In this document: positions 33,101 through 59,531 of the stretch, piece by piece
How the letters are laid out: each line of letters begins with the position of its first letter
Position numbering within the stretch: the stretch's first letter is position 1
Virus record (IMG/VR): IMGVR_UViG_3300027621_000003
Span: 1-64,000 of that record
DNA length: 64,000 bases
Strand: one strand, 5' to 3'
Notes under the pieces: generated by a model
The model's database searches: none
What the model was told of the DNA's origin: nothing
What the model saw: the letters and a program-made list of their open reading frames with translations, nothing else
Position numbers and translations under genes: made by a program

Positions 33101-36100
33101 CTATATCCAGCTTGTGTTGATATTTGAGCGTTTGGTATTGCCCCAACAACTAATCCTTGACTAATTGCTGTTTGTATATCAGTATTTGTGTATCCCGTCA
33201 ACAATTCTTGGCCAGTAACTAAAAAGTATGTGTCATTAATAATCTTTGGATAAAATCCAAGATTCATTTGTACTTGTGATAAAACTAATGGTGGTTGTGA
33301 TATTGTGTCTTGAGCAACAATATTATAATTTTCATTGGTTGATGTAAATGTATATTGTTTCTGTAATGACGAACCATCGGGGTCATAAAGATTTGCAACA
33401 TTCACATTTTTCCAAACAGAATCTAAAATGTCTACATTTGTTTCAACATATGTTTTGTAACGGTGCCAAATAGAACCATATTTTATAATCCAAGCATATG
33501 GTAATTTATGTACACCACCAAATTTTGTTAGAGTGGTAAAAATATAATCTAAATCAGTAAAACCTTCTGTTGTAATGTTTTTATATTTTTCTCTTAATGT
33601 CGCAAGTGGTAATGAATTTAAAAACAAATATGCCGGTAAAACATATGGGGTTGTATTTGTATTATTTCTATCTTTATCAACACCATCTTGTAATGCGTTA
33701 ATAAAGAAAGGTGTATTTAACATTGATGTTGTTTGGAATGCATCAACATTTCCTGTTTTAGCTTGGTAATTTATTGGTCCTTCGGTTACCAAGAAACTAT
33801 TATTTAAACGTCTTTCTTTATAAAATTGATTAAAGGCCGCTAAAGTTCCTGTTGGTGCTACACCTGTAAGATTTCCCGACCCACCAACGGATAATATTGG
33901 TTTGGGTGTTGTTAATGTTTTAATGAAACAATTATTAACAAAAGGTCTATTGTTATTTAAACTATCAGCACTTTCATAATTGGTAATATATCTCTGAGTA
34001 TCATTTAAAAACAAACTTTTTGTTGTATCAAAAACATTACCTTTTGATGTTTTTACACCGGCCAAGTTTTCATTTTGCCAATCAGTAATAACAAATGGAT
34101 AAACATCCATTATGTTTGTTTGTGTTGACAATGTTGATTTAATATAATTTGATATGTTTGTTAATGATTGAATATTTTTATTCGTGGTTGGTTTTGATTT
34201 AATAAACGAACTATTTAAAATTGCGTAATCATTTTCCGTAATTGCTCTTAAATACTCAGAAGTAAATTCACCTCTAGTAAATTGTTGCCAACTAAGCCCA
34301 GTTCCGTCATTTGAAATACTTTTAAGAGCTAACGGGAAACCTTGTGGTGTAAAAGCAAAGTTTTTTAATATTTTTGTTAAACTTGGACTTGTAGAAGCAA
34401 GTGCTGTTCTTATGTTGGAAACCTCTAAATCGGATAATGTATTATATACTGATAATTGTTTTGCTCCTGATGTAGACAATCTATCCCAATATGATGCCAA
34501 TAAGACTCTCTCATAAATTTCATAAATAAATTTAACACTATCATAATCACTATACGGTATGTTTGTTGTGGGGAATTCAATACCGTTTACAGTAATTCTA
34601 CTTATAACATTGGCTTCGTTATTACTACCATTTGGGCCCATATTAATACTAGCTCTTTGAGCTAATCCTTTCATATATTCTTCAACAAATTGAACTTCAG
34701 GCCAAACCTTATAATCATTCGCTCTTGTTTTTGATATTTCTGACGGGTCACCTGGGTATCTTAATTCAAACCTTTCACCATCAGGATTGTTTGTTTCAAC
34801 AAAATATTGTGGCCAAGGATATACTGGAATATCTTTTAAAGCGTTTTGGTCCGTTTGTTGTACTAAATCTTTACTATCAGTACTAACGGAAGATTTTGTA
34901 TTATCAAACACCGCATTTTTTCTAATTGGGTTTAACCTCTGACTCCAAGCTTGACTATGTACATCATCCATTAATCTATAAAACGCTTCAACGGACGCAA
35001 ATATCATTGCCATGATATTTCTCATTGTTGGTTTAAATCCTAAACCATCATTACCTTCAATTTTTTTAGATAAAAACTCATTTAACGCAAGAACAATTTT
35101 TTCTTTTTGTTGGGACAAATCTTCAAATGTTTTATCTAAGATGTCTGAAAAGTTACCAGGTCCGTCAAATACAAAATTATAGGTTGGTGGAATAAAACTA
35201 TTTCCAGTATCATTAGAAAATGTTCTAAAGAATATTGATTCCGATGCTGTTAAACCTGAAATTTCAGCTGTACTAAGTGCTTCTCTTTTATATCTAATTT
35301 TAAATGTTTCCGCCCAGTTAATATCATTTTCACTTATACTTTTTCTAACAGAGTCCGAACCAACTAAATTAGAACTATCGTTAGTCACATCACCCATGAC
35401 TTTATTAGAACCAACTAATCCAACTACTTCTCTAACAGAAAAACCTGTTTGGAGAGATGTTTGTAGTGCAGATGGTATTATTGTTGGTTGTATAGTTAAA
35501 TTGTTAATTTTAGTAACTTTTGATGTTTGTTTTTTACCATCAATTGTAAATGTTCCCGGGTCACTTAATGTTTTATTTTTAGCCAAATCAACTTTATATC
35601 CATCAACTAATTGTTTTAGTTGTGAATACGCATTAACTTGTAATTGTAAATTAGCTCTAGTGTTATTATTGTAAATGTAAGTAAGTACACCATTTTTACC
35701 ACCAACAACACTAGGGTCTAACACAAAAATTTTTTCTTGGTCAAGATATTTCTTAGACCAACTAGTATCATCAGTTGATAACACACTATCTCTTAAACTT
35801 GTTAATAATTTAAAATATGTATCACAATCAGAAAGTGGTGTAAAATCCGTTTGTCCAAAACTTTGTTGTAAATTTTTTTCTAACGCCTCTAATCTAGCTT
35901 TTAATTCGGGAAATGAAAGTTCTGGAAGATTTGGTGAAATTAAACCTAATGCTTTATATCTTTTGTAAACATCTCTAATGGTTTGACCACCTTTTGTTAC
36001 CCTTACTGAAGATGTTGTAACATCAGGGTTTCCATTAGATGTTTGAGCCGCGTTTACACCAGGAGAATTTGGTGCGGTATTGTTAATTCTATAATCCGTT

Positions 36101-36855
36101 GTATACATAAACGGTACGGCAAACAAAGCACCAACTTGTGTTTCCGCTAAAATTGTATATTTGTAAGAATAAAATTTTAAACTAATTCTATAGTTTCCAG
36201 TATTACCTTCAAACGCCGCAGAAAAATTAGTTAAAATAAGTTGATATCTAATTGCTTTACCATAATACCCTTTTAATGTTAAATAAAATGTTGGATACGG
36301 TAAGTTAAAGAAGCAGGCATATTCTGAGTTTTCACCTTTTTCAAATAATGCTCTTCCTTGAACATCAATTAACACAACTTCAACTGTTGGTGTTAAACTT
36401 CTTGTGTTTTTAATTCTTATACTTTCAATACCTAATAAACCAGTATCTTCACTGTTAATTGTGTTTTGTTTAATATAAAAATCGTCACTTTTGTTTTGTT
36501 GTTGTACATTGGTTTTACTTGGTTGGTTTGTACCTTTACCATCAACAGTGTTTAAACCAGTAATTTCATTTAGATAATTGTTATTCAGTGTTGTTTTTCC
36601 ACCAGGTCTTAAAAAGTTAATTGATGCGATTGGTGTTGTTTGTACTGCATCTGTAAGAGCGGAACCAACGGCTAATTTTGTTCTTGGTAACATTTTTGCT
36701 TCCAAGTTGGCATACATAACAAGGTCTTCATGATGTATTGGTCTATCCATTGGTTGACCAAGACTATTCTCAACCTTATTTGGGTCAATTAAAAATATAT
36801 TATCATAATCGGATTCAATGTAGATATTGTCCGTTGTACCAAAATTATCTGCCAT
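30166..36855 (-). CDS. Very large baseplate hub protein (gp27 / late-control-D-like)
   Basis: 2229 aa; N-terminal LGIESIRI...VEVVLIDVQG and late YECRVESMGNMMIQPTMYFNL...GPYMIQSVEHTIS...KTFFSGVR, typical hub beta-barrel ends. Confidence 0.7.
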   Translation of the reverse strand: MADNFGTTDNIYIESDYDNIFLIDPNKVENSLGQPMDRPIHHEDLVMYANLEAKMLPRTKLAVGSALTDAVQTTPIASINFLRPGGKTTLNNNYLNEITGLNTVDGKGTNQPSKTNVQQQNKSDDFYIKQNTINSEDTGLLGIESIRIKNTRSLTPTVEVVLIDVQGRALFEKGENSEYACFFNLPYPTFYLTLKGYYGKAIRYQLILTNFSAAFEGNTGNYRISLKFYSYKYTILAETQVGALFAVPFMYTTDYRINNTAPNSPGVNAAQTSNGNPDVTTSSVRVTKGGQTIRDVYKRYKALGLISPNLPELSFPELKARLEALEKNLQQSFGQTDFTPLSDCDTYFKLLTSLRDSVLSTDDTSWSKKYLDQEKIFVLDPSVVGGKNGVLTYIYNNNTRANLQLQVNAYSQLKQLVDGYKVDLAKNKTLSDPGTFTIDGKKQTSKVTKINNLTIQPTIIPSALQTSLQTGFSVREVVGLVGSNKVMGDVTNDSSNLVGSDSVRKSISENDINWAETFKIRYKREALSTAEISGLTASESIFFRTFSNDTGNSFIPPTYNFVFDGPGNFSDILDKTFEDLSQQKEKIVLALNEFLSKKIEGNDGLGFKPTMRNIMAMIFASVEAFYRLMDDVHSQAWSQRLNPIRKNAVFDNTKSSVSTDSKDLVQQTDQNALKDIPVYPWPQYFVETNNPDGERFELRYPGDPSEISKTRANDYKVWPEVQFVEEYMKGLAQRASINMGPNGSNNEANVISRITVNGIEFPTTNIPYSDYDSVKFIYEIYERVLLASYWDRLSTSGAKQLSVYNTLSDLEVSNIRTALASTSPSLTKILKNFAFTPQGFPLALKSISNDGTGLSWQQFTRGEFTSEYLRAITENDYAILNSSFIKSKPTTNKNIQSLTNISNYIKSTLSTQTNIMDVYPFVITDWQNENLAGVKTSKGNVFDTTKSLFLNDTQRYITNYESADSLNNNRPFVNNCFIKTLTTPKPILSVGGSGNLTGVAPTGTLAAFNQFYKERRLNNSFLVTEGPINYQAKTGNVDAFQTTSMLNTPFFINALQDGVDKDRNNTNTTPYVLPAYLFLNSLPLATLREKYKNITTEGFTDLDYIFTTLTKFGGVHKLPYAWIIKYGSIWHRYKTYVETNVDILDSVWKNVNVANLYDPDGSSLQKQYTFTSTNENYNIVAQDTISQPPLVLSQVQMNLGFYPKIINDTYFLVTGQELLTGYTNTDIQTAISQGLVVGAIPNAQISTQAGYSSTPNQVLKFNNFFTTFETQNSPKFKSNQQYKTLLMPSFGTIYNQVIGECFTETITGLIQTQEVQNNKAVFNGSVRPFWAAPNFGYFELSSITKPGPNEYMKEVYPNLEIQDVVKFGQTYSKIDDVFGTFKTEILDSFETEFLNFCKSFTDLTSEDLSDSSYANRNFQGLMSQMLLVPTITLTSTLDNYVVDCGNAQLTQANTVIQSFVNYDVVFKYGNPSNFNRRVFGTFTTLNTTNYNKVVDPYPYNAYVQNSVPVTNGAATQITLLQSKAAYPNAWIAMETYVGFATTTGLTYSNSGSYYTDFFPTLNVEFTEGNVKNFAPLIKIFGTQKSLNNGIYTKTDFITAINDFYTNNDEYLNYVLGELMFVLRKELPDYVETTEKPILSAIDGMQPKVELYEAFKSFNDKWIAGSEFKDKTLYQDVMFLDRANRDIGDKVLVDVFKLKDFFSGTTSLDARIIDFVSRIIADNQFQMMPLPAYMNFWGAGEVTQGVKPKEERANDLANSLFGTFLDVDYRESQPKFVCYYAGKPSEHLDMRENADYRWRTDAFDLSRNSDNPLISELKSTKTDWAQSNKVVGFNVDFGIRNQSVFYSIQLDQNNAAATTEANRVISDMSNQAGGRRTNTQNVSLYNLYKNRSYECRVESMGNMMIQPTMYFNLRNVPMFRGPYMIQSVEHTISAGDFKTFFSGVRMPIYSLPLITKQLVSINANLLGQLVQILKRQKETEVASTQPTVNVITIGNSVQTNVIYSSAFQSQCQADMLSTNPKYQKFLGIENTQQSISFADLAKIIRDNVTLGPARAMVLYTAYVNGHDDNSVYTYNHDLGNTILGGGSFPQQISYGGREKYFQKQFGCKTNQNGYAQPSAVFTTGTSGESFTNSVKFINDYYLNEQVLSKSLLFAPLFTTGNTGSLVWDTKESYVENMYTVWIKYWPQKRFQTDDQYTQWLKSNKNMADTFRTSAENVVELLSKYKLVNFK

Positions 36856-37165
36856 AATAGAAGAAATAGTTGTCTAAACCATTTTTATAGTCTTGTAATG
36901 AAGATATGAGTGGATATGGAATTGTCAATATAGCATTATTTGGAATATTCCATTCTAATCCACCATATTCAGGATTGCCTTGTAATATTAACCAACCAAA
37001 AAAAGGTGTTCCATAATATTGTTGGGATACTTTGTCTAACCTACTAAATCCAGTTCTGTAGATATATCTTTGGTCAGATGATTTTGACTGTAGTGGAATA
37101 AATGGAACCACAGTTTGTTCACCATTAATTGAAAATTGTTGATATCGGTTGTAATAAGCATCCAT
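36845..37165 (-). CDS. LysM-like baseplate wedge protein (T4 gp53 / P2 gpX-like)
   Basis: RLDKVSQQYYGTPFFGWLILQGNP...LTIP. Confidence 0.8.
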   Translation of the reverse strand: MDAYYNRYQQFSINGEQTVVPFIPLQSKSSDQRYIYRTGFSRLDKVSQQYYGTPFFGWLILQGNPEYGGLEWNIPNNAILTIPYPLISSLQDYKNGLDNYFFYYGR

Positions 37166-40100
37166 TAATTAAATTTTTTCTTGAAGTTATATGGGTTTAT
37201 GCTTGAACTATCGTTTTTATTTGCGTAAAGATTTTGTAATTGTTTTTTAAGGTCTTCAGATGCTGCGCTATCTTCACTAAAATCAACAACTCTTTTTTGT
37301 GTTGTACCAAATGGTGGTGTATAATCAACATAATTTTTACCAGTGGTGTTTGTTTGGAATGTTGTCATTAAAGCAAGACCTGTTTGATTTAATTTTGGCC
37401 ATTGTACATATAATGAATTTGGACCTGAAAAATAATATGATTCAACTGCGAATTTGGTATAAACGTCTAACCCTTCTTGTAGTGCGTTTAAGAAATTATC
37501 TTTTGCTGATTCAATTGTTATGGCTCTTGACATTAATAAATATTCTCTTGTTTTTTCTGGTGTTGATAAAAATTCATATCCTGTTGGTGGTGTAAAAACG
37601 CCAGGTTCATTTGGTTTATAGGAACTAGTTACATATAATTGTGCTGCGGTTAAATCAGTTAAAAATTGATTGTTATTAGTTGCTATAGAAGTATAATCAT
37701 TTCTAAGGGATGTTAAAGTATCTATTGGAGTTCCATTAACAGTTTCTGTTTGACCCGTTGTTATATAAATAATTGCAATATTTTTATCATTTAATTTACC
37801 GTCATGTCCTGTTGTAGTTCCACTAGCAACAAAATTCATTCTATCAACATTATAAACATAATCTTGTTGTAGTTCTGTTAAAGTATTTACATCAGAGGTA
37901 ATTGTATTTAAAAAACTACTTCTGTAAGTTTTAACAAAATTTGAATAGTTTTTCTTGAACAATCTTTTTTGAGCCGTTGTAATTACAGATTTTGTAAATT
38001 CACCTGATGTGAATATTGGTAAGTTATCATCGTCAACATCTTTTAACAATGCTTTAAATGCTTCGTCAACATATTTTTGAGTATTAATTGGTTTACCATA
38101 AATTAAAGTAGTTGTTGATGTTGCGGAATTAAATGAACCCGTGTTATATCCTTGATTATCACCACCATAATTTAATATTGCCAACATACCATAATTATAG
38201 TTTAATAAAGCACTATTCATGGTATTCATAACACCATTATAATACGCTTTAGTTTTATCAACAAATTTGTTGGTAAATGTTGCATATTCAATAGTTCCTG
38301 TTTGTCCACTATCCGTTAAACCCGTAAATGTTGAAACACCAATAGTATTTCCACCATCATTTGTTTTATCATTTTGAATGTTGGCGACACCAACAGTTGG
38401 TGGATTTTGAGTTAACGCTTGGATAATTTGTTTATCAAGTTTACTTGTATCTTCAGTTGCTTCGGCTCTTTCATCATACATCTCAGTATTAGCATAATAG
38501 TTGAATGATAATGCGTTTTGTAATGTATCAATTGGTGCCGCCAATCCTGAACCTCCAACAAAATTAAAACTTAAATTGACATCAACAATCATAGGTTGGA
38601 AACCAATACCTTCAGGGTTCATATCAAATGTTTTATCATATGTAAAACTTAAAGATGTTGGAACAATTTTAGTGTTATAAAAATCTCCAATACGTAATAC
38701 CATGATTGGTGGTGCTCCAAACGATGTGTTTAACGCATCATTATAAAGTTTTTCACCATTGGTACCAATTGTTGGGATTGTTTCACCAGGTCTCATACAT
38801 TGTTGTAGGAAAGTTAAACGTGAGTTAAGTCCCTCAGGCGTTGTTGAGTGAAATGCTGGTTGGAAATATTTAATTTTTTCTTTAATTGAATCATAAATAA
38901 ATGGATTTTCAGCCTTTAAAACTTCAAAATAATCACACTCATTTAACAAATATCTTAATAATTTTTTGGAAGCTCCTTTATATAAATCTTTTTGTGGTTG
39001 TTGATTTACAACAGTATTAGTTTGACCTGGTTTTTGTCCTGTGTTTGGTTTTCCAGCGGCGTTGTTTGCTGCACTATTTTCAGCGGCTGTTGAGCTTGGT
39101 TCTGAGTTCTTTTCAATTGGTTTAATTTCAACATTTTTTAATAATACTGCTCTACAAGCCATTGCTCTTGTTGTATACTTTTCATTATTAAGAGCTTCGT
39201 CTTTACAATCGTAAGTACTGTAACTTTGTTTACCTCTTGGGGTTACACTTGCAACTTCACCTTTTGCAATAGTATTGAATACTAATGTTGAACCAATAAA
39301 TTGACCTAACGAATTATTATTCGCACCAAAACTATAAGTTTTAAAGAATTCAACTACAGATTCACCTCTTCTAACAGACAACTTATCGTTATAATCAATA
39401 GATGACGATGGTGATGCACTTGCCTCCAAAGTAACTAAAATACTAGAAGCTTGTTTTTGACTCAAAATATTATACATTTTTTGAGCCATTTCTTTTAATC
39501 TTGTATAGTTTTCTTCAATAACACCATCAAAAAATTGGGTTGTAACCTGTTTGTCTTTTGAGTTGTTATTATATACTTGTTTATTAGACGCTGATGTATA
39601 GTTAGCGTATGTTGTTTGAAAAGCCACTGATGTTGGGCTTGGTATATCATTATCAAAATAAAACCCAAAACCATTATATTCGTTTAATGTTGGGTTTCCT
39701 GTAGCATCATCTGTTGTTCCCCCATCCTGTAATGAGTTTGTGGCTACGGAATTGGTTGCTTTTGAAGCATCAACAATATCTGTATTTGTTGCGTTTGGAT
39801 TAGTAATTATTTCTTGCCAAGCCTGTAAATCAGTTAATGGAACTGTGTTATAAATTTTAGCAAGTTCATATAAATCATATTTTTTACAACCAGCAAAAAA
39901 CGAATCAACAATAGAATCTACTTTTTGTCTATCACCTTCATTTGCTAACACCTTATTAACAATAAGATTTAGAATTGACGGATGGTCAACAATCATCTTC
40001 CATTTCAATGTACCACTACGAGAAGTGTTTTTATAGGTATAAATTGGTTCGGGTCTACCCAAGAAGGTAGTCTCGTTAAATGATGGTCTTGTATCCTCAG

Positions 40101-42024
40101 TAAATGATAAATCATATGGTGGAAACCACATTACTCTACCACCATTAGGTCCTTTTTCACAAGCGGGTAAATCATCAACTCTATATCCCGCTCTATATCC
40201 TGTTCTCCAAGCCAAGTTTTCAATTGAGAACATGTATTTTTTAACTTTACCATTAACAACACTATCTCCACCTTTTTCAGGTGCGATATTAATGTTGAAA
40301 GTAGAGTCCATTACGGAGTATGAAAACTTACGAATATTTCCGTCTTTCTTTTGTAAGTTGTTAAAAGTATAATATGGTGTGTCTTTAGTAAAAACACGAC
40401 AATATTCAATACCCACATTGGCTTGTCCATCAGAATATCTAACAATCTGAGAACCTTTTGTAATTTCTTTATAACCATCAAAGAAAACTTTTGATGTTTG
40501 ACTAATTGCGTTACCTACGTGTCCAAATCTGGCTCCTGAATTTGGTTGTGAATCAATTAATCTTTGAGTATCATCTAAAATTGAACCTGGTTTGAATTCA
40601 TAGTTTACTGATTCAGTTGCTGTAAATTGATTTGATATTGATGGATATGCCGGGTCTTCTGTTCCGTAATCTCCACCAGGTTTTTGATACCTACCTGCGT
40701 TTGGTGCCCATTTTTGACTCACCCAACTAAAACCACCAACAATACTGCCGTCATCAACAAATGGTTTACCAGCCAAACCAAATTTAAAGTCTTTGTCAAC
40801 ACCTTCATATTCTTTCCCTAAAACATCAGGACCATAAACAGGTGCCAATACTTGAGCCCCAAATGGGTCAATAGGTACTTGACCTGGAGGAGATGTTAAA
40901 TATCCGGGTTCCCTTTCAGGACTACCCACATAATAAGTTCCTTGACTGGCGTTGTTAGCAATTGCACCTGTAATTGCGTTTCCAAGTGCCGATAAAATTC
41001 CTGTTCCACCTGTATTGTATTGTGGACGGAATCTGTTCATATCTAAGTTCTGAGTCAATTGAGCTCTTTGACCTGAACCTGTATAATCTAAAAATACTTG
41101 AGATGGTGATGTTGGTCTTGAACCAAATAAACCAAATAATCCACCTCGTTTTCCATTACCAGCCGCCTTAACCGCCGATTGGGTTGAGTTGATATCACGA
41201 GCTTCGTAATAACTTCCCGGTATTGGTGAAAATGGTAATGTAAAACCAGCAATACGTTGGACAATATCTTGACCTTGTGATAAAATATTTCCACCACCTG
41301 ATGTAATTTTCCAATCTCTATAAATTAAAGGTTTTTTTCCTGCTAAGATTAAAGATAAATTAACGGGGTCTTGAACACCATTTAATATATTTACTCTACC
41401 TAGTGTCTCAGTTCTAACATTTTGGTCTACTCTATATTGAAAAGATTGCTTTGCTCCTTTAATACCTAATCTAGCCAATTCTGAATCATCACTAGCGGGG
41501 CCATTATCACCAACGGGGTCGGCTTGTAATAAAACTGAAAATGGTGAATATGATGATGGTCTAAAACTTGGTGGGTCCCAATAAGTGGCGTTTTTCTGTA
41601 CTTTAATAACATCACCCATGTCATAATAGGTGTATTGGTTTCCTGGCGAATAAACATTTTTAATGTATTGTCTTTTTTGGAACGATACTGAGTATAATTG
41701 TAATGCTTCGGTATATGGTGGTGTTTGAGTATAAGGACCTTGGTTTGATAATGTTTGTTGTGTATTAATTAAACCATCAATATTTTTATTATACCCACCT
41801 AAAGGACCAAACGTATTGTTTGTATATAATTTGTCGGCATATGGGTCAGCATCAATTAATGCATCAGGAGAATCAATAACCGAATAATCACTTCTAATAT
41901 ATTCATCAACACCCGATACACCTACAGGAGTATACACACCAGGTTTCGCATAAGGTTTTAAATTCCTTACCAATAATGAATTTCTTACGAATTGTGTTTC
42001 AATAAAGGTTAATTTACTTGGCAT
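37165..42024 (-). CDS. Tail tube initiator-like protein (gp48/gp54-like) with inserted OmpA-like domain
   Basis: FLGRPEPIYTYKNTSRSGTL and PPIMVLRIGDF...VDVNLSF tube-fold halves flank FYFDND...ASAS...YNDKLSVRRGESV...RAMACRAV. Confidence 0.65.
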   Translation of the reverse strand: MPSKLTFIETQFVRNSLLVRNLKPYAKPGVYTPVGVSGVDEYIRSDYSVIDSPDALIDADPYADKLYTNNTFGPLGGYNKNIDGLINTQQTLSNQGPYTQTPPYTEALQLYSVSFQKRQYIKNVYSPGNQYTYYDMGDVIKVQKNATYWDPPSFRPSSYSPFSVLLQADPVGDNGPASDDSELARLGIKGAKQSFQYRVDQNVRTETLGRVNILNGVQDPVNLSLILAGKKPLIYRDWKITSGGGNILSQGQDIVQRIAGFTLPFSPIPGSYYEARDINSTQSAVKAAGNGKRGGLFGLFGSRPTSPSQVFLDYTGSGQRAQLTQNLDMNRFRPQYNTGGTGILSALGNAITGAIANNASQGTYYVGSPEREPGYLTSPPGQVPIDPFGAQVLAPVYGPDVLGKEYEGVDKDFKFGLAGKPFVDDGSIVGGFSWVSQKWAPNAGRYQKPGGDYGTEDPAYPSISNQFTATESVNYEFKPGSILDDTQRLIDSQPNSGARFGHVGNAISQTSKVFFDGYKEITKGSQIVRYSDGQANVGIEYCRVFTKDTPYYTFNNLQKKDGNIRKFSYSVMDSTFNINIAPEKGGDSVVNGKVKKYMFSIENLAWRTGYRAGYRVDDLPACEKGPNGGRVMWFPPYDLSFTEDTRPSFNETTFLGRPEPIYTYKNTSRSGTLKWKMIVDHPSILNLIVNKVLANEGDRQKVDSIVDSFFAGCKKYDLYELAKIYNTVPLTDLQAWQEIITNPNATNTDIVDASKATNSVATNSLQDGGTTDDATGNPTLNEYNGFGFYFDNDIPSPTSVAFQTTYANYTSASNKQVYNNNSKDKQVTTQFFDGVIEENYTRLKEMAQKMYNILSQKQASSILVTLEASASPSSSIDYNDKLSVRRGESVVEFFKTYSFGANNNSLGQFIGSTLVFNTIAKGEVASVTPRGKQSYSTYDCKDEALNNEKYTTRAMACRAVLLKNVEIKPIEKNSEPSSTAAENSAANNAAGKPNTGQKPGQTNTVVNQQPQKDLYKGASKKLLRYLLNECDYFEVLKAENPFIYDSIKEKIKYFQPAFHSTTPEGLNSRLTFLQQCMRPGETIPTIGTNGEKLYNDALNTSFGAPPIMVLRIGDFYNTKIVPTSLSFTYDKTFDMNPEGIGFQPMIVDVNLSFNFVGGSGLAAPIDTLQNALSFNYYANTEMYDERAEATEDTSKLDKQIIQALTQNPPTVGVANIQNDKTNDGGNTIGVSTFTGLTDSGQTGTIEYATFTNKFVDKTKAYYNGVMNTMNSALLNYNYGMLAILNYGGDNQGYNTGSFNSATSTTTLIYGKPINTQKYVDEAFKALLKDVDDDNLPIFTSGEFTKSVITTAQKRLFKKNYSNFVKTYRSSFLNTITSDVNTLTELQQDYVYNVDRMNFVASGTTTGHDGKLNDKNIAIIYITTGQTETVNGTPIDTLTSLRNDYTSIATNNNQFLTDLTAAQLYVTSSYKPNEPGVFTPPTGYEFLSTPEKTREYLLMSRAITIESAKDNFLNALQEGLDVYTKFAVESYYFSGPNSLYVQWPKLNQTGLALMTTFQTNTTGKNYVDYTPPFGTTQKRVVDFSEDSAASEDLKKQLQNLYANKNDSSSINPYNFKKKFN

Positions 42025-51477: not shown

Positions 51478-53247
51478 TTGGAAAATACTGAAAACACATA
51501 TAATGTCTCTGTGTTAGAAAGAAGGGCTCTTGATTTGTTAGAGACATATCAGGGTGCCAATAATTACATCATACGTTTAAGACAAAAACAAATTGATAAT
51601 AAAAAGTTTTACCCAACTCGTGCTCAAGCCGAGTACATTATAAATTATCACGAAACCGCACCAAAGGTTGCGAAGAAATGGGTGGAACTTGATTCTTATT
51701 TTGCCCAAAAAATTGCTAATGACAAATTACTTTCATCTGTACCAACAAAAGTATATGTTGAAAAACTTTTGGTTGAAAAAGATACCGCCTATCATATTTG
51801 GGGAAAATATTTTGAATCAGAACAAGTCTATGACTTTTGGATTCCAAAGGTTGCGTTGATAAAAGACAATAAAGTTAAGGATGTTGTGATTGATTATGAA
51901 AAATATTCTCACCGTCCACCACTTGAACACCAAAAAGAGGCTATTAAATCTTTGGTTGAGAATAAAAAGTTTATTCTTGCTGATGATATGGGTTTGGGTA
52001 AAACAACATCAACTATTATTGCCGCTTTGGAAACAGGGGCAAAAAAGATTTTGATTATTTGTCCGGCATCTTTGAAGATTAATTGGCAACGTGAGATTGA
52101 AAATTATTCAGACAAACCAACGTCAATCATTGAAGGTAAAAAATGGGAAGATGGTACTTTTGTTATCATCAATTATGACATCATTAAAAATTTCCACGAT
52201 GAAAAAAAGAAAGATGATTCTGTTTTATTGAAAACAAAGTTTGATTTGGTGATTATTGATGAAGCACACTACATTCAAAACAAACAAGCTCAAAGAACCA
52301 AGTTAATCAATGACTTTGTATCCAATGTTGAAAGACTTTGGTTGTTAACAGGTACACCAATTACTTCAAGACCAATTAATTACTTCAATTTATTGAACTT
52401 AATTGAGTGTCCTGTAGCTAAAAATTGGATGGCTTATGTTAAAAGGTATTGTAATGGTTTTCAATTCCAAGCAGGAAGAAGAAAAATTTGGAATGTTAGT
52501 GGAGCATCCAACTTGGAAGAGTTAAGAGACCGAACCGCACCCTTGGTGTTAAGAAGATTAAAGGAAAATGTTTTAGATTTACCCGATAAAATCATTACAC
52601 CAGTTTATTTAAGATTAAAATCAAAAGAATATGAAGCCTTAATGGGTGAGTATTATGATTGGTACGATAAAAATGGTGATTCTGATTCATTAACACTTCA
52701 GTTTACCAAACTTACAAAAGTAAGACAGGTGATTGCCGAAGAAAAAGTTCCATCAACAATTGAAATTTGTGAAAACATTGTTGAACAAGGTAAGAAAGTA
52801 ATTGTTTTTACTAACTTTACCAAAACATTGGAGATGATATTAGAACATTTTGGAAAAAGTGCTGTTAGACTTGATGGACAAATGTCCCAAAAAGAAAGAC
52901 AATTGTCCGTTGACCGTTTTCAAAACGATGAGAGTGTTATGGTATTTGTTGGGAACATAAAAGCCGCTGGTGTTGGTATTACATTGACAGCGGGTGAGGC
53001 GGTTGTAATGAACGATTTGTCCTTTTTACCATCAGACCACTCTCAAGCAGAGGATAGAAGTTACCGTTATGGACAAAAAAATAATGTATTAGTTTATTAT
53101 CCAATTTTTGACAACACGGTAGAAGGAATCATCTATGACATACTCAAAAAGAAGAAAGACATCTTTGAAACCGTGATGGGTGATAAGGTAGACAATGGCG
53201 ATTATGTTCAAGAAATACTAGAACTTATAAATAATTGGAGGCGATAA
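51478..53247 (+). CDS. SNF2-family (SMARCAL1/HARP-like) helicase
   Basis: ILADDMGLGKT, CPASLKINW, IIDEAH, LLTGTP, RRLKENVL, AAGVGITL, QAEDRSYRYGQ. Confidence 0.93.
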   Translation: MENTENTYNVSVLERRALDLLETYQGANNYIIRLRQKQIDNKKFYPTRAQAEYIINYHETAPKVAKKWVELDSYFAQKIANDKLLSSVPTKVYVEKLLVEKDTAYHIWGKYFESEQVYDFWIPKVALIKDNKVKDVVIDYEKYSHRPPLEHQKEAIKSLVENKKFILADDMGLGKTTSTIIAALETGAKKILIICPASLKINWQREIENYSDKPTSIIEGKKWEDGTFVIINYDIIKNFHDEKKKDDSVLLKTKFDLVIIDEAHYIQNKQAQRTKLINDFVSNVERLWLLTGTPITSRPINYFNLLNLIECPVAKNWMAYVKRYCNGFQFQAGRRKIWNVSGASNLEELRDRTAPLVLRRLKENVLDLPDKIITPVYLRLKSKEYEALMGEYYDWYDKNGDSDSLTLQFTKLTKVRQVIAEEKVPSTIEICENIVEQGKKVIVFTNFTKTLEMILEHFGKSAVRLDGQMSQKERQLSVDRFQNDESVMVFVGNIKAAGVGITLTAGEAVVMNDLSFLPSDHSQAEDRSYRYGQKNNVLVYYPIFDNTVEGIIYDILKKKKDIFETVMGDKVDNGDYVQEILELINNWRR

Positions 53248-53260
53248 TCAAACTTCGGCT

Positions 53261-53268
53261 TATTTATA
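53261..53268 (+). promoter_or_regulatory. TATTTATA putative late promoter (SOD fusion)
   Basis: The motif switches strand with gene orientation; 29 nt upstream of ATG. Confidence 0.65.
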
Positions 53269-53297
53269 ATTAATAAACATTAATAAAAGCCGACCTT

Positions 53298-54842
53298 ATG
53301 AAGAATCTTAAAAATAGGATTGAAGTAATTGAAGAAGATTTACAAAAAAAAGAAGTTAAAAGACAACAAGAACAAAAAGTACAAAAAGTTGTCGCAGAAG
53401 CCAAAAACATTAAGATAGAAAAATTACCCTATTCTTATGCCGCACTAAAACAATTTATTGACCCCGAAACCATGAGTGTTCATTATAACAAACACTACAA
53501 AGGTTATGTTGATAAATTAAACGGAGCATTAAAAGATGATGAGGATTTAACCTTAGAAGAAATTGTTAAAACAATAGACAGTTTCAACAAATTCATTAGA
53601 AACAATGCGGGTGGTGCCTACAACCACCAATTGTTTTGGAAAATGTTAACACCAAAAACAACAAAACCGGGTCCAATCACACTTAAAAAAATTAATCAGA
53701 GTTTTTCATCATTTGCCGACTTTAAAAAGAAATTTGAAGGTCAATCAAAAGATAGGTTTGGTTCAGGATGGTGTTGGTTAGTTCTTACAAAACGAGGAAC
53801 CTTAAAAATTATGACAACCGCGAATCAAGACAATCCACTTATGGATGTTGTTGACCAAGGTGGTTATCCAATTTTAGGTTTGGATTTATGGGAACACGCA
53901 TATTATCTAAAATATAGAAATAGGAAAGACGAATACGTAAAAAACTTTTGGAGAGTTGTTAATTGGGACTACGTAGAGTCAGAACTTTCAAGAAAGTTAG
54001 ATAAAACAGTAAAAGAATCTACAACCGCTAAAGAATTTTTGACCGAAGCGGTTAAAAGTGAACCCTGTTCAACCCAAGATAAGATGGCATCAAAGTTATT
54101 GTTTAATACAAACAGAGATGTTCTTAATCTATACAAGAATGCCATCATGCAAATTTTAAAAGATACATTTGCTGATAGATACTACAACAAAGATGAATAC
54201 GAAAAAGGACAAATGTCGGGTGTTTATAATTTGGAAGGTAAAGGAAGGTCAGTTATAAATTATTTAAACACAAACTACAGTGCATTTTGTGTATTGAAAA
54301 AAGATATAAACAAATATCTTACAAAAGTAGGTGAGGAACCTATTATTTTTTCAGATAAAACACCAAAAGAACAAGTTATTGAAATGGCAAGAATGTTGAA
54401 GGTTTTAAACAAAGTTAAGTTTAGAGTATTCTCATTGGAGTCTGAAACATTAAAGACAGTTATGAGTGTAATGGGTGTAACATCAGACAAAGGTAATAAA
54501 ACTGAAGACGCTGTTGTTGAAAAACTAAAAAAACAATTTGGTGATGAAAATGTAACTCGTATTGGTGAACTTGGAAACAAAGAAGATATGATGACGGGTG
54601 TTGATGTTAAGATTATGGTTGATGGTGTTGAAAAAACCGCACAGGTAAAACCATTCAGTCACATAACAAGAAATGATGACATGTATAAAGTTGACGGAAC
54701 CGCAAATGTTAAAAAATATCAAACAAATTGGATGATTTTTATGAAACGTTTGGATGATATGGTAATCTTTGATAATTCAAATACAAAAATCATTGACGGA
54801 GTTTATTATTTCCTAATTGATGCCAAGTTGTATCAATTATAA
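53298..54842 (+). CDS. sodA: Mn/Fe superoxide dismutase fused to a C-terminal PD-(D/E)XK-like domain
   Basis: LPYSYAAL...HYNKH, GGAYNHQLFW, FGSGWCWL, NQDNP, DLWEHAYY (all four metal ligands; GG and NQD indicate Mn type). C-terminal GNKTE...D-x3-GVD...AQVK. Confidence 0.88.
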   Translation: MKNLKNRIEVIEEDLQKKEVKRQQEQKVQKVVAEAKNIKIEKLPYSYAALKQFIDPETMSVHYNKHYKGYVDKLNGALKDDEDLTLEEIVKTIDSFNKFIRNNAGGAYNHQLFWKMLTPKTTKPGPITLKKINQSFSSFADFKKKFEGQSKDRFGSGWCWLVLTKRGTLKIMTTANQDNPLMDVVDQGGYPILGLDLWEHAYYLKYRNRKDEYVKNFWRVVNWDYVESELSRKLDKTVKESTTAKEFLTEAVKSEPCSTQDKMASKLLFNTNRDVLNLYKNAIMQILKDTFADRYYNKDEYEKGQMSGVYNLEGKGRSVINYLNTNYSAFCVLKKDINKYLTKVGEEPIIFSDKTPKEQVIEMARMLKVLNKVKFRVFSLESETLKTVMSVMGVTSDKGNKTEDAVVEKLKKQFGDENVTRIGELGNKEDMMTGVDVKIMVDGVEKTAQVKPFSHITRNDDMYKVDGTANVKKYQTNWMIFMKRLDDMVIFDNSNTKIIDGVYYFLIDAKLYQL

Positions 54843-54850
54843 TAACCTGA

Positions 54851-54858
54851 TATTTATA
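54851..54858 (+). promoter_or_regulatory. TATTTATA putative late promoter (neck gene)
   Basis: 11 nt upstream of ATG 54870. Confidence 0.65.
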
Positions 54859-54869
54859 TACAAAAGACT

Positions 54870-55985
54870 ATGGTAGTTATTGCTGAACCAGAAAGAACCA
54901 AACTGTATAACAGGATTTTAAATCAACTTGGAGCTCCATTAAGAGCTGTGGAATTAGAATTTGAAATGATGGATTCATTACTTGAATTATCCATCGGTGA
55001 CTATACGCAATATCTTTATGACTGGTTAATTGAATCACAATGGACAACATTGTATGGTATGAATTTGGATACCCAATCAGTAGCAAATGCTTTAATTAGA
55101 CGAAGTCTTGATTGGGAAACACAATACACTTACGCATATTCTAAAATTGTTGGTCTTCAAAACTCAGGTCCTTGGGTACTTAAAAAGGATTACTTTGAAT
55201 TACAACAAAATGTACAAATATATGAAATACCTGCGGGTCGTGAAATTAACGAACTTTTATGGTATTCACCAGCCGAGCAAAACAATTTGTTATTTGACCC
55301 TTTTTCATTGGGTAGTCTTGGTGGTATAGGTGGATTTGGTGGTGTAGGTGGGTTTGCTCAAGCGGGTAACGGTGGAGGATATTTTATGTTATCATCTTAT
55401 GATGTGTTAGCAAGACAACAAGACTTAAATCTTAAAAGAAGAATTATTCAACCCGATGTTAGTTATCGTGTAACAGCACTTCCCGATGGAAAAAGAGCGG
55501 TTATGTTGTATAACACACCTGGTGGTAGATTTGACTTTGGTGATAATGAATTAATGAGAGGCCGTGTTTGGTATTGGTATTATGACACAACTGATGCTGA
55601 CAGAGACCAATGTCTTAAAGATAATCCCGATATCGTAAAATTACCATCAGACATTCCATTAGACGAATTAAGCTGGATTGATTTAAACGACCCTGCAAGA
55701 CAATGGGTTAGAAGATGGTTCACCGCATACTGCAAAGAGACCTTGGCTCGTGTAAGGGGTAAATTCAGTGGTAATTTGAAGACACCTGATAGTGAATTAA
55801 CAATGGATTATCAGTCTCTTCAAACCGAAGCTAAAGATGAAAAAGTTTCTTTAGTGACAGAACTCCAACTAAGATTAGAAAGATTACGTCCTGAAAAACA
55901 AATGGAAAAAGAAGGTTCTATTGCTGAAAATTTAAACAAGCAATTAAAATATAGAGCAATGCCAATACCAATAACTGTTGTATAA
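54870..55985 (+). CDS. Neck / head-tail adaptor protein (T4 gp13-like)
   Basis: RILNQLGAPLRAVEL and WVRRWFTAYCKETLARVRGKF parallel the T4 gp13 N- and C-terminal motifs. Confidence 0.8.
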   Translation: MVVIAEPERTKLYNRILNQLGAPLRAVELEFEMMDSLLELSIGDYTQYLYDWLIESQWTTLYGMNLDTQSVANALIRRSLDWETQYTYAYSKIVGLQNSGPWVLKKDYFELQQNVQIYEIPAGREINELLWYSPAEQNNLLFDPFSLGSLGGIGGFGGVGGFAQAGNGGGYFMLSSYDVLARQQDLNLKRRIIQPDVSYRVTALPDGKRAVMLYNTPGGRFDFGDNELMRGRVWYWYYDTTDADRDQCLKDNPDIVKLPSDIPLDELSWIDLNDPARQWVRRWFTAYCKETLARVRGKFSGNLKTPDSELTMDYQSLQTEAKDEKVSLVTELQLRLERLRPEKQMEKEGSIAENLNKQLKYRAMPIPITVV

Positions 55986-59104: not shown

Positions 59105-59133
59105 AGTATAGGTATTGGATTTAACCTCGTCAA
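59105..59133 (-). promoter_or_regulatory. Sigma70-like promoter of the DNA polymerase gene
   Basis: TTGACG-N17-TATACT followed by a structured leader of about 65 nt. Confidence 0.7.
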
Positions 59134-59531
59134 CAACAAGGACTATCTATAATAAAACTTTCTTGAACATTGATATATAACTCATCTCTTAATGGTAGAA
59201 TAAGATTTCCTTCAATTCCACCTAAAAGACCATTATTATATTTAATCAAAAATTGTCCAACATAACGACCAACACTATTTGTATCACGAGATGTGAATTT
59301 AAAATATACGTAATACTCAGGTAATGCATTTGAGTCGTCATTAACCACTTCTACAATATACGCAGGTTTTGAAACAATTTTTGGTATTCCTGTTGCTTCA
59401 TCAATCATAGAAAAGAAAATTGACGCACTACCTAAAGAATCCATAAAAGATTGGTATTCACTTCTACCGTCTCTTACCACTTGCATTTTTAAAAGTGGTA
59501 ATGTCGCGTTTTTCTTAATATTAAATTCCAT
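59130..59531 (-). CDS. Ig-like virion protein (BppU N-terminal-like)
   Basis: FNIKKNATLPLLKMQV...YFKFTSRDTNSVGRYVGQFLIKY...LILP; TATTTATA 4 nt upstream. Confidence 0.6.
   Translation of the reverse strand: MEFNIKKNATLPLLKMQVVRDGRSEYQSFMDSLGSASIFFSMIDEATGIPKIVSKPAYIVEVVNDDSNALPEYYVYFKFTSRDTNSVGRYVGQFLIKYNNGLLGGIEGNLILPLRDELYINVQESFIIDSPCC

What the first reader, a model, noticed from the sequence alone, without database searches (positions are those of the whole stretch)
53298..54842. Mn-superoxide dismutase fused to a restriction-endonuclease-fold domain, probably a late virion polyprotein
Seen: a 38-aa charged leader, a complete SOD (about residues 39-232, all metal ligands present), a linker with VKES/LTEA, a helical region, then GNKTEDAVVEKL...EDMMTGVDVKI...TAQVKP. 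Established: E...D...(Q/E)xK is the PD-(D/E)XK catalytic pattern (QxK in Mrr-like members), and phage SODs are more often stand-alone Cu/Zn enzymes. Inference: an architecture I do not recognise, coupling superoxide removal with a DNA-acting domain. It may be cleaved in the capsid to protect packaged DNA from oxidative damage or to counter ROS-linked host defence on entry.
Basis: partly seen in the sequence, partly recalled or inferred. Interest (0 to 1): 0.7.

Follow-up and report, generated by a model that had tools for sequence, protein, structure and literature searches.

The report
Phage SOD–nuclease fusion, probably capsid-processed
A widespread freshwater jumbo phage encodes one protein that joins a manganese superoxide dismutase to a previously unnamed restriction-enzyme-fold nuclease, and conserved cut-site motifs suggest, without proving, that the phage's head protease separates the two inside the capsid.

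Summary
Window 53298-54842(+) is one intact 514-aa ORF. It has a 34-38 aa helical leader, a complete Mn-type Fe/Mn SOD, a flexible linker, a ~145-aa helical domain of unknown fold, and a C-terminal ~117-aa PD-(D/E)XK domain. In that domain D436 and Q449-x-K451 are invariant and E403 nearly so.

The fusion is real. It occurs in more than 120 homologues down to about 40% identity, and identical copies occur in many lake metagenomes.

The nuclease module is a virus-only family with no Pfam, PHROG, NCBIfam or PADLOC model. Most members are stand-alone proteins of 245-300 aa. Relatives show three other states at the same locus: SOD and module as two overlapping genes, leader plus module without SOD, and the fused form.

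Three [L/I/V]-x-E motifs (E34, E240, E250) are 97-100% conserved in otherwise variable, low-confidence segments, and they bracket the SOD. The genome encodes a T4 gp21-type prohead protease. Its capsid protein carries L-I-N-E|A aligned to the T4 gp23 maturation site.

My best reading, at confidence about 0.45, is a head-targeted polyprotein cut into SOD and nuclease. There is no proteomic proof, and the transcription timing evidence is only suggestive.

The parts
53255..53293 (+). Intergenic control region. A TATTTATA promoter-like octamer sits at 53261-53268, 37 nt before the ATG. It is enclosed by a 7-bp inverted repeat, 53255-53261 against 53287-53293.
   Evidence: The octamer class is 17-22x enriched upstream of genes genome-wide. 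It is present before the scaffold, protease and tail operons. It is conserved before the SOD gene in relatives L031, L022 and L038. Sequence read.
53298..53399 (+). Leader, residues 1-34. It is a heptad-patterned charged helix ending in V-A-E34|A, and is the putative propeptide or capsid-targeting segment.
   Evidence: AF2 models it as a single helix, residues 2-36. L4, I8, I11 and I15 are conserved. E34 is 100% conserved and P3 is 100% L/I/V in 124 homologues. The same leader is kept in SOD-less relatives P0141, P0145 and P0149.
53400..54017 (+). Mn-type Fe/Mn superoxide dismutase, residues 35-240. The metal ligands are H62 (53481-53483), H110 (53625-53627), D196 (53883-53885) and H200 (53895-53897).
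   Evidence: Pfam, PDB, NCBIfam Mn 193 bits against Fe 163 bits, ligands invariant.
54018..54047 (+). Flexible linker, residues 241-250. It lies between two conserved [L/I/V]-x-E motifs: V-K-E240|S just before it and L-T-E250|A at its end.
   Evidence: Residues 238-251 have pLDDT below 50. E240 is 100% and E250 is 97-99% conserved, with hydrophobic P3 and variable neighbours.
54048..54488 (+). Helical N-terminal domain of the nuclease module, residues 251-397. It carries the conserved motif GRSxxNxLNTNY, and C257 and C331 are invariant in the SOD-linked clade. The fold is unassigned.
   Evidence: The AF2 model is confident here. No fold match above noise was found for this part.
54489..54842 (+). 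PD-(D/E)XK nuclease-fold domain, residues 398-514, plus the stop codon. Catalytic candidates are E403 (54504-54506), D436 (54603-54605), Q449 (54642-54644) and K451 (54648-54650).
   Evidence: Fold searches. Invariant residues. E403 lies on the long helix, D436 at the start of one strand and QxK in the next strand.
51478..53247 (+). Upstream neighbour: an SNF2-family helicase of 589 aa. The synteny is conserved, but the gene does not appear to be co-transcribed with the SOD fusion.
   Evidence: Pfam and PHROG. Same position in relatives. No RNA contig over 51591-53166 in four metatranscriptomes.
54851..55985 (+). Downstream neighbour: a second TATTTATA at 54851-54858, followed by a 371-aa T4 gp13-like neck or head-completion protein at 54870-55985.
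   Evidence: phrog_211 head-tail adaptor at 1.6e-9. Orthologues carry PF26809 Phage_T4_gp13. The motif is conserved in L031 and L038.

Best explanation
The gene encodes a modular precursor with four parts. These are an N-terminal coiled leader, a Mn-superoxide dismutase, a flexible linker, and a two-domain protein whose C-terminal half is a catalytically intact PD-(D/E)XK nuclease.

Shown: the architecture, the fold, the conservation of the SOD ligands and of the nuclease E/D/QxK residues, the existence of split and SOD-less variants at the same locus, and the presence of a T4 gp21-type (Peptidase_S77) prohead protease in the genome.

Inferred: the leader acts like a T4 capsid-targeting propeptide that brings the precursor into the prohead core. 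The prohead protease then cuts after E34, E240 and E250, all of them [L/I/V]-x-E sites, and releases free SOD (about residues 35-240) and free nuclease (about 251-514). Both stay in the DNA-filled head and enter the host with the genome.

More speculative: once in the host, the SOD removes superoxide at the start of infection and the nuclease acts on DNA. Its target could be host or competitor DNA, or the phage's own DNA ends or branches.
For: (1) Across 124 fused homologues (34 at under 80% identity), E34, E240 and E250 are 97-100% conserved, with L/I/V/M at P3 in 99-100% of sequences. The neighbouring leader and linker positions are only 20-60% conserved. The three sites bracket the SOD exactly.

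(2) E240 and E250 lie in the only segment with pLDDT below 50 (residues 238-251). A pTM of 0.52 indicates independent domains.

(3) The genome has Peptidase_S77 at 84 bits, above the cut-off. Its gp23-like capsid protein carries an L-I-N-E60|A site that BLASTP aligns with T4 gp23 F-L-T-E65|A. This site is invariant in 100 relatives. T4 gp21 removes 65 residues from gp23 (PMC9958956), and S77 proteases cut after Glu at short motifs (PMC5694885). In the T4 capsid-targeting sequence, residues 8 and 10 govern processing (PMC9026906).

(4) A Rosetta-stone variant exists. In L038/L039 the SOD (224 aa, with its own leader ending I-F-E|A) and the module (271 aa, starting MKNSFVLNE|E) are separate genes overlapping by 1 nt, in the same synteny. 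The two halves can therefore work as separate polypeptides.

(5) The SOD-less relatives P0141 and P0145 keep the leader plus h-x-E joined directly to the module. This is what a propeptide would look like.

(6) The gene has its own TATTTATA element, shared with the adjacent gp13-like neck gene and with the scaffold, protease and tail operons, and conserved in divergent relatives.

(7) In four lake metatranscriptomes the sheath, SOD-fusion and gp13-like genes are covered, while the SNF2 gene body has no contig.

(8) There is precedent for virion-packaged SOD in chlorovirus PBCV-1 (PMC7019647), and for nucleases and other enzymes targeted into T4 heads through a capsid-targeting sequence (PMC9026906).
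Against: No virion proteomics or cleavage data exist, because there is no cultured relative in the phage collection.

[LIVM]-x-E is a short motif. About 28% of this genome's proteins have one at residues 8-20. Distant stand-alone family members are only weakly enriched, at 40% (p=0.04, not corrected for phylogeny).

The leader is not shared with any other protein of the genome, unlike the T4 internal proteins.

E34 sits at the edge of a conserved block (EMKKIGIEKLPY), which could have a structural role in the SOD.

The flanking genes include an SNF2 helicase and PolB, which are replication-type neighbours.

The TATTTATA class also precedes many small genes of unknown function, so it is not proven to be late.

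The RNA runs were selected because they hold this gene, and they are unstranded contigs.

An active nuclease packed together with the genome would need to be restrained somehow.
Confidence: 0.45

Rival explanations
1. The protein is a cytoplasmic bifunctional enzyme that is never processed. In this reading the nuclease module is a structure-specific or repair nuclease working with the upstream SNF2 helicase and PolB during replication and recombination. The fused SOD protects replicating DNA or Fe-S and Mn enzymes from superoxide. The leader is an oligomerisation coil.
For: The order SNF2 helicase, then module, is conserved in fused and SOD-less relatives, and PolB lies convergent downstream. 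Pairs of an AHJR-type PD-(D/E)XK nuclease with an unknown N-terminal domain next to an SF2 helicase are a known theme (COG3372/pfam05626 in PMC1189080). The closest folds include Holliday-junction resolvases.
Against: This reading does not explain why three h-x-E motifs in disordered segments are the most conserved leader and linker positions. It also does not explain why a split form keeps an h-x-E after each new N-terminus. The gene has its own conserved promoter-like element. The SNF2 gene body is not covered in RNA runs where the fusion is covered. The distant half of the family has not been shown to sit next to helicases.
Confidence: 0.28
2. The module is a head-completion or DNA-end factor, acting as a non-homologous analogue of T4 gp4 (head-completion nuclease) or gp2 (DNA-end protector). 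It would act at the portal after packaging, alongside the adjacent gp13-like neck protein. The SOD would be a later add-on. Processing by the protease is not required in this reading.
For: The gene lies directly upstream of the gp13-like gene and a small following gene in all relatives, and shares their upstream motif. T4 gp4 is itself predicted to be a PD-(D/E)XK nuclease (PMC1189080). No gp4 family (phrog_218) or gp2 family (phrog_429) is detectable in this 98%-complete genome, even though it has T4-like MCP, protease and gp13.
Against: Profile comparison of the family with T4 gp2 and gp4 gives nothing, at probability below 1%. The genome carries a second paralogue far from the neck genes. 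The conserved leader and the h-x-E motifs remain unexplained. Failure to detect gp4 and gp2 in a divergent phage is weak evidence.
Confidence: 0.17
3. The C-terminal domain is a selfish homing endonuclease of the I-Ssp6803I / PDDEXK_5 type that happened to land next to, and fuse with, an auxiliary SOD gene.
For: I-Ssp6803I is among the top structural matches. Intron-associated PD-(D/E)XK clusters appear in the atlas search.
Against: The module always has a further conserved ~145-aa helical domain. It sits in a fixed syntenic slot across relatives at 40-100% identity rather than being sporadic. It has no Pfam PDDEXK_5 hit, and there is no intron or intein context.
Confidence: 0.03

Closest known systems
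Bacterial Mn-superoxide dismutases (for example C. difficile SOD 3tjt, E. coli SodA 1d5n)
   Same: Both Pfam domains are present, along with all four metal ligands, the Mn-type Gly-Gly and Asn-Gln-Asp signatures, and the dimer-bridging Glu-His-x-Tyr-Tyr. Identity to 3tjt is roughly half by eye over about 190 residues, at E 6e-59.
   Different: This SOD carries a 34-aa coiled leader and a 270-aa C-terminal extension. It is encoded by a jumbo phage, and flanked by conserved [L/I/V]-x-E motifs.
Minimal PD-(D/E)XK nucleases: archaeal Hjc resolvases (2wcw, 1gef), homing endonuclease I-Ssp6803I (2ost), NhoI and HhaI
   Same: The alpha-beta-beta-beta-alpha-beta core is shared over about 100 residues (Z 7-8). 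An acidic residue lies on helix 1, an Asp at the start of strand 2 and (E/Q)-x-K in strand 3.
   Different: Sequence identity is 9-17%, and no sequence model recognises the domain. It has QxK instead of ExK, an additional invariant Asp430 and Tyr474, and an N-terminal helical domain without any structural match.
T4 internal proteins and Alt (carrying a capsid-targeting sequence and processed by gp21), and the processed ejection proteins of phiKZ, 201phi2-1 and SPN3US
   Same: There is an N-terminal propeptide ending in a hydrophobic-x-Glu site. An S77 prohead protease is encoded in the same genome. The cargo is enzymatic, and the cargo is evolutionarily modular (PMC9026906, PMC5694885).
   Different: Packaging and cleavage are not demonstrated here. 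The leader is longer (34 aa) than the T4 capsid-targeting sequence, and is not shared with other proteins of the genome. Two enzymes would be released from one precursor. I know of no natural phage example of that.
Virion-packaged Cu/Zn SOD of chlorovirus PBCV-1 (A245R)
   Same: It is a virus-encoded SOD, expressed late, packaged and thought to blunt the superoxide burst at entry (PMC7019647).
   Different: It belongs to a different SOD family (Cu/Zn), it comes from a eukaryotic virus, it is a stand-alone protein, and no protease processing is involved.
T4 gp4 head-completion nuclease and gp2 DNA-end protector
   Same: These are head-associated DNA-acting proteins encoded near neck or head-completion genes. 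T4 gp4 is predicted to be a PD-(D/E)XK nuclease (PMC1189080).
   Different: There is no detectable homology. Size and domain make-up also differ.

Membership tests
Fe/Mn superoxide dismutase (Pfam PF00081 + PF02777) | Both domains score above the Pfam gathering thresholds | tested here: met
   72.9 bits against a threshold of 27, and 131 bits against 20.9
Fe/Mn superoxide dismutase (Pfam PF00081 + PF02777) | Four metal ligands (His, His, Asp, His) and the second-shell Tyr and Gln | tested here: met
   H62, H110, D196, H200, Y70 and Q177 are invariant in 62 homologues. They align to the ligands of solved MnSODs.
Fe/Mn superoxide dismutase (Pfam PF00081 + PF02777) | Mn rather than Fe specificity (Gly-Gly before the second His; Gln in the C-terminal domain) | tested here: inconclusive
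   AGGAYNH and ANQDNP match the Mn-type signature (established knowledge). The top PDB hits are MnSODs. NCBIfam scores Mn at 193 bits and Fe at 163 bits, both below the equivalog cut-offs. Metal use needs an assay.
PD-(D/E)XK nuclease superfamily | Restriction-endonuclease-like alpha/beta core fold | tested here: met
   The AF2 model has pLDDT 92.8. The top 20 or more VIA rows and the top Foldseek rows are all PD-(D/E)XK enzymes, covering residues 398-514.
PD-(D/E)XK nuclease superfamily | Catalytic Asp at strand 2 and (D/E/Q)-x-Lys in strand 3, plus an acidic residue on helix 1 | tested here: met
   D436, Q449 and K451 are invariant and E403 is at least 90% conserved in 65 sequences. No residue-level superposition was available.
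PD-(D/E)XK nuclease superfamily | Recognised by an existing sequence family model | tested here: not met
   There was no Pfam, PHROG, NCBIfam, PADLOC or PDB sequence hit for the module. Only scattered sub-threshold hits to RE families appeared in single members.
PD-(D/E)XK nuclease superfamily | Mg-dependent nuclease activity | not testable with these tools
   Needs purified protein and D436A and K451A mutants.
T4-type head-internal proteins processed by the prohead protease | An S77 (gp21-like) prohead protease in the same genome, with T4-like site preference | tested here: met
   PF03420 at 84 bits. The MCP site L-I-N-E|A aligns to T4 gp23 L-T-E65|A and is invariant in the clade.
T4-type head-internal proteins processed by the prohead protease | An N-terminal propeptide ending in a conserved hydrophobic-x-Glu site | tested here: met
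   E34 is 100% conserved and P3 is 100% L/I/V. The site is kept in the split and SOD-less forms.
T4-type head-internal proteins processed by the prohead protease | The leader resembles targeting sequences of other head proteins of the same phage | tested here: not met
   An HMM of the leader finds no other protein in the genome.
T4-type head-internal proteins processed by the prohead protease | Late expression | tested here: inconclusive
   The gene shares the TATTTATA element with head, neck and tail operons, but many unknown small genes have it too. RNA contigs cover the gene along with the sheath and gp13-like genes and not SNF2, but the runs were selected by this gene.
T4-type head-internal proteins processed by the prohead protease | The protein is present in virions and is cleaved at the predicted sites | not testable with these tools
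   There is no cultured relative. Needs proteomics.
T4 gp4 / gp2 head-completion proteins | Sequence homology | tested here: not met
   hhalign probability is below 1% for both.
Helicase-nuclease repair pairs (for example the COG3372-type AHJR nuclease with an SF2 helicase) | Conserved adjacency to an SF2 helicase | tested here: met
   SNF2 lies upstream in the window, in L031 and in the P0141 contig. This has not been shown for distant family members.
Helicase-nuclease repair pairs (for example the COG3372-type AHJR nuclease with an SF2 helicase) | Co-expression with, or physical interaction with, the helicase | tested here: inconclusive
   No RNA contig covers the helicase body in four runs where the fusion is covered. 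Interaction cannot be settled with these tools.
PD-(D/E)XK homing endonucleases (I-Ssp6803I / PDDEXK_5) | Sporadic, intron- or intein-associated distribution | tested here: not met
   The module sits in a fixed syntenic slot in all relatives examined. There is no PF11645 hit.

The most novel reading that the evidence does not exclude
This may be a natural two-enzyme polyprotein of a T4-like jumbo phage. A coiled propeptide would target it to the prohead. The gp21-type protease would cut it at three conserved L/I/V-x-E sites, releasing an active Mn-SOD and an active PD-(D/E)XK nuclease. Both would be packed with the genome and injected. If so, this would be the first phage known to carry an antioxidant enzyme, and a new nuclease family, in its capsid. 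The fused, split and SOD-less variants would show the capsid-targeting system capturing new cargo in evolution.
Probability: 0.4. Interest if true: 0.78.

Novelty: new variant of a known kind. Interest (0 to 1): 0.62.

Why it matters
T4's capsid-targeting sequences have been used experimentally to load foreign enzymes into phage heads. They have also been proposed as an evolutionary route for acquiring new injected proteins. This locus may show that route in nature, with a host-type SOD inserted in frame between a propeptide and an older head-associated nuclease, and with gene-fission and loss variants preserved in relatives.

The phage clade is very abundant in lakes. Its capsid protein alone has more than 7,900 database relatives. 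An injected SOD would therefore bear on how common oxidative stress or ROS-linked defence is at phage entry.

Independently of that, the C-terminal module defines an unannotated, virus-only PD-(D/E)XK family of about 170 clusters at 50% identity. It currently hides behind the label 'superoxide dismutase' or 'hypothetical protein'.

Tried and rejected
1. Sequence models for the module. Pfam, PHROGs, NCBIfam, PADLOC and PDB sequence searches, with a single sequence and with a profile, all gave nothing significant.

2. Cultured-phage relatives that might have proteomics. tblastn with four divergent members found only two uncultured 735-kb phage records.

3. The search for related loci with the family alignment failed because no stretch was conserved enough. 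The single-protein scan returned only close relatives.

4. Homology to T4 gp2 and gp4 by hhalign: none. Single-sequence and PHROG-profile searches for gp4 and gp2 in the genome also found none.

5. A leader HMM searched against all ORFs of the genome found no second protein with this leader.

6. A capsid-targeting-like N-terminal [LIVM]-x-E in distant stand-alone homologues showed only weak enrichment, 40% against 28% (p=0.04, phylogeny not controlled). I do not rely on it.

7. I tried to class the TATTTATA element as 'late'. It precedes head, neck and tail operons but also many small unknown genes, so the timing remains open.

8. Complex prediction of the SNF2 helicase with the module (residues 252-514) gave no verdict, with a score of 0.00. 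This is not evidence either way.

9. The helical domain, residues 251-397, gave no convincing structural match in PDB, AFDB clusters, BFVD or the atlas beyond its own family.

10. Literature searches found no paper describing this fusion. The library is limited, so this does not prove that it is unpublished.
Full report
**1. The observation**

Window 53298-54842(+) is a single ATG-initiated ORF of 514 codons without interruption. Pfam places Sod_Fe_N at residues 39-117 and Sod_Fe_C at 129-228, both far above threshold. The best solved relatives are Mn-SODs, with 3tjt at E 6e-59. NCBIfam scores the Mn equivalog model higher than the Fe model.

The ligands H62, H110, D196 and H200, the gateway Tyr70, and the Mn-type Gly105-Gly106 and Asn-Gln177-Asp178 signatures are invariant in 62-124 homologues.

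The window is the first 64 kb of a 294,914-bp viral record rated 98% complete. The genome has T4-like head genes: a gp23-type capsid protein, a Peptidase_S77 prohead protease, an acidic scaffold and a portal, all at 105-113 kb. GC content is about 32%.

**2. The fusion is real and conserved**

A search with residues 233-514 found more than 100 clusters of 505-521 aa that carry both SOD domains plus this C-terminal region, down to about 40% identity. Copies 100% identical over the queried module lie on independent IMG/VR contigs. Fourteen DNA runs from 2017-2025 hold every sampled word. BFVD already contains a member labelled only 'superoxide dismutase'. It is met naturally in a relative (section 5).

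**3. The C-terminal region**

An exhaustive HMMER scan found 169 representative clusters. Most are stand-alone proteins of 245-300 aa. A few are C-terminal parts of larger proteins of 1109, 597 and 403 aa. The genome has a second, diverged paralogue at 178.5-179.6 kb.

An alignment of 65 members with about 20% mean identity has G399, D430, D436, Q449, K451 and Y474 invariant. E403, G426 and G434 are at least 90% conserved (full-length numbering).

An AF2 model built on this alignment is very confident, with pLDDT 92.8 and pTM 0.87. Foldseek against the PDB puts I-Ssp6803I, Hjc, the SPARDA nuclease, AvaII, NhoI and HhaI at the top. The Foldseek-independent VIA scan gives Hjc Z 8.1, I-Ssp6803I Z 7.9, NhoI Z 7.8 and HhaI Z 7.3. 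The top 20 rows (Z at least 5) are restriction-endonuclease-like-fold proteins apart from one protein of unknown function (3fov), and all cover model residues about 165-282, which are residues 398-514 of the full protein. AFDB clusters and the ESM atlas agree.

E403 lies on the long helix, D436 at the start of the next-but-one strand, and Q449-x-K451 in the following strand. This is the canonical arrangement. Activity is untested.

Residues 251-397 form a separate helical domain with a conserved GRSxxNxLNTNY motif and no structural match. No curated sequence family covers the module. The atlas clusters are 100% viral.

**4. Context**

Upstream on the same strand is an SNF2-family helicase. Downstream are a 371-aa protein and a 114-aa protein. 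The orthologues of the 371-aa protein carry Pfam Phage_T4_gp13 (neck). A family-B DNA polymerase lies convergent to these, and the tail sheath lies further upstream on the other strand. This order is conserved in a relative at 48% identity (L031). By neighbours alone the gene is ambiguous, because it sits between replication and head-completion functions.

**5. Modular variants**

Three other states occur at the same locus in relatives.

- (a) L038 and L039, from two independent samples, encode the SOD (224 aa) and the module (P0146, 271 aa) as separate genes whose stop and start overlap by one base (TAATG). These are followed by the gp13-like gene, a small gene and PolB.
- (b) P0141 (290 aa) follows the SNF2 helicase directly and has no SOD.
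- (c) P0145 is likewise SOD-less, and the gene before it ends like the SNF2 C-terminus.

P0141, P0145 and P0149 nevertheless keep the same heptad-patterned N-terminal leader as the fused proteins, joined directly to the module. So the leader belongs to the module protein, and the SOD sits as a cassette between leader and module.

In a maximum-likelihood tree of the module, all SOD-linked forms fall in one clade of 33 rows, interleaved with SOD-less rows. Some of these rows are truncated ORFs. The distant half of the family is entirely stand-alone.

**6. The junction motifs**

In 124 fused homologues, three Glu residues outside the folded domains are essentially invariant. Each has L/I/V/M two residues before it in 99-100% of sequences:

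- V-A-E34|A or M, at the end of the leader.
- V-K-E240|S.
- L-T-E250|A or G.

In a set thinned to under 80% identity (34 sequences), the surrounding leader and linker positions are only 20-60% conserved.

The full-length AF2 model makes the leader one long helix (residues 2-36). It gives pLDDT below 50 exactly for residues 238-251, and pTM 0.52, which indicates two independent domains on a flexible tether.

In the split variant, the SOD keeps a shorter leader ending I-F-E|A and the module begins MKNSFVLNE|E. The first linker site is replaced by the stop codon.

The motif matches what is known of S77 prohead proteases. They cut after Glu at short motifs: A-x-E in SPN3US, analogous motifs in phiKZ and 201phi2-1, and T4 gp21 also after Glu (PMC5694885). 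In the T4 capsid-targeting sequence, residues 8 and 10 control processing, and gp21 itself has a 'LIE-9' site (PMC9026906).

This genome encodes such a protease, whose own N-terminus reads ...G-I-L-I-E|M. BLASTP aligns the capsid protein's H-L-I-N-E60|A-S with T4 gp23 F-L-T-E65|A-E, where T4 removes a 65-residue propeptide (PMC9958956). That capsid site is invariant in 100 relatives. The fusion's F-L-T-E250|A is the same pentapeptide as the T4 gp23 site.

**7. Expression signals**

A genome-wide scan of 60-nt upstream regions finds two enriched motif classes. One is TATTTAT(A/T), 17-22x enriched. The other is TAnnTTTG / TATCTTTG, which resembles the Bacteroidota -7 promoter element (my knowledge).

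The first class precedes the scaffold, protease and several tail operons, and also many small unknown genes. The second class is essentially absent from the head and tail modules, with one distal match 80 nt before a single tail-region gene.

The SOD fusion has TATTTATA 37 nt before its ATG, inside a 7-bp inverted repeat. The gp13-like gene has one 19 nt before its ATG. Both are conserved in L031, L022 and L038.

Four lake metatranscriptomes that hold parts of the gene show contigs over the SOD fusion, the gp13-like gene and, strongly, the sheath gene. No contig covers 51591-53166, the body of the SNF2 gene.

Three caveats apply. The runs were chosen by words of this gene, the contigs are unstranded, and holes prove little. 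Still, the pattern argues against simple co-transcription with the helicase, and it is compatible with the structural-gene class.

**8. Interpretation**

The best-supported mechanism is a head-targeted precursor processed by the prohead protease into free Mn-SOD and free nuclease. By analogy with the T4 internal proteins and Alt, and with the ejection proteins of giant phages, both would be carried in the capsid and delivered with the DNA.

There is a precedent for a packaged viral SOD in chlorovirus PBCV-1 (PMC7019647). There is also a precedent for nucleases tolerated in T4 heads when fused to a capsid-targeting sequence (PMC9026906).

I put this at about 0.45, because every step after 'the motifs are conserved and the protease is present' is inference. 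The main rivals are:

- An unprocessed cytoplasmic repair or replication enzyme paired with the SNF2 helicase (0.28).
- A head-completion or DNA-end factor analogous to T4 gp4 or gp2 (0.17). Neither of those is detectable in this genome, and they show no homology to the module.

The last two readings, together with the best one, place the protein at or in the head. 'Head-associated' is therefore more likely than not.

**9. Novelty**

Each ingredient is known: Mn-SOD, the PD-(D/E)XK fold, and gp21-type processing. New here are the unannotated nuclease family, its conserved fusion with SOD, the fused, split and absent series, and the protease-site signature. I found no description of the fusion in the searchable literature. 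I rate it a new variant of a known kind, with interest about 0.6.

Noticed in passing
window 2-2248 (-): This is a protein of at least 749 aa, running off the window start. About two-thirds of it is a collagen-like (Gly-Ser-Ser / Gly-Thr-Ser / Gly-Glu-Ser)n repeat. This explains the GC of 0.43 and the strong skew at the window start, and the spurious overlapping ORFs on the other strand.
   Followed up: partly
window 14783-19831, 30166-36855, 37165-42024 (all -): Three giant ORFs of 1682, 2229 and 1619 aa lie in the tail/baseplate region upstream of the sheath gene. They were not analysed.
   Followed up: no
whole genome G000; for example window 59130-59531 upstream: Two upstream motif classes occur: TATTTAT(A/T), and a Bacteroidota-like TAnnTTTG (often TATCTTTG). 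Very often they start only 11-13 nt before the start codon. This suggests a Bacteroidota host and very short or absent 5' leaders. No Shine-Dalgarno sequence is visible before the genes I read.
   Followed up: partly
window 53255-53293: A 7-bp inverted repeat (TCGGCTT / AAGCCGA) encloses the TATTTATA element in front of the SOD fusion. The 71%-identical relative L022 has a 9-bp version (GTTCGGCTT / AAGCCGAAC). It could be a regulatory hairpin, or the end of the SNF2 transcript.
   Followed up: partly
window 53344-53351: There is an A8 run inside the leader coding region. One metatranscriptome contig (run X16) carries A9, which would shift the frame, and another run shows A8. This is probably slippage or error.
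   Followed up: no
G000:C1:177086-177910 (+) (L003:1-825): A neighbour of the module paralogue is a protein with at least eight tandem copies of an 'E-D-x-I-Q-N-G-V-K-x-T' repeat.
   Followed up: no
G000:C1:178526-179605 (-) (L003:1441-2520): This is a second, diverged copy of the nuclease module (359 aa). Identity is 34% over residues 369-498 of the query. It has a ~95-aa N-terminal extension and a TATTTATA 22 nt upstream. Its catalytic D, QxK is kept (FQVKP).
   Followed up: partly
P0273 (1109 aa), P0278 (597 aa), BFVD A0A8D9CCA0: The same module forms the C-terminus of much larger phage proteins. Their N-terminal regions match no family, and they start MKY..NFL..(I-N-E|S).
   Followed up: partly
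G000:C1:105167-107023 (-) and the runs: The capsid protein has more than 7,900 database relatives at E<=1e-5, the listed ones at 86-99% N-terminal identity. The SOD region is found complete in 14 DNA runs from 2017-2025, including one labelled 'crustacean metagenome'. This is a very abundant freshwater jumbo-phage clade.
   Followed up: no
L001 (LR756501.1 688909-697499): A 735-kb uncultured megaphage carries a stand-alone 290-aa member of the module family, next to a SET-domain-like 145-aa ORF.
   Followed up: no
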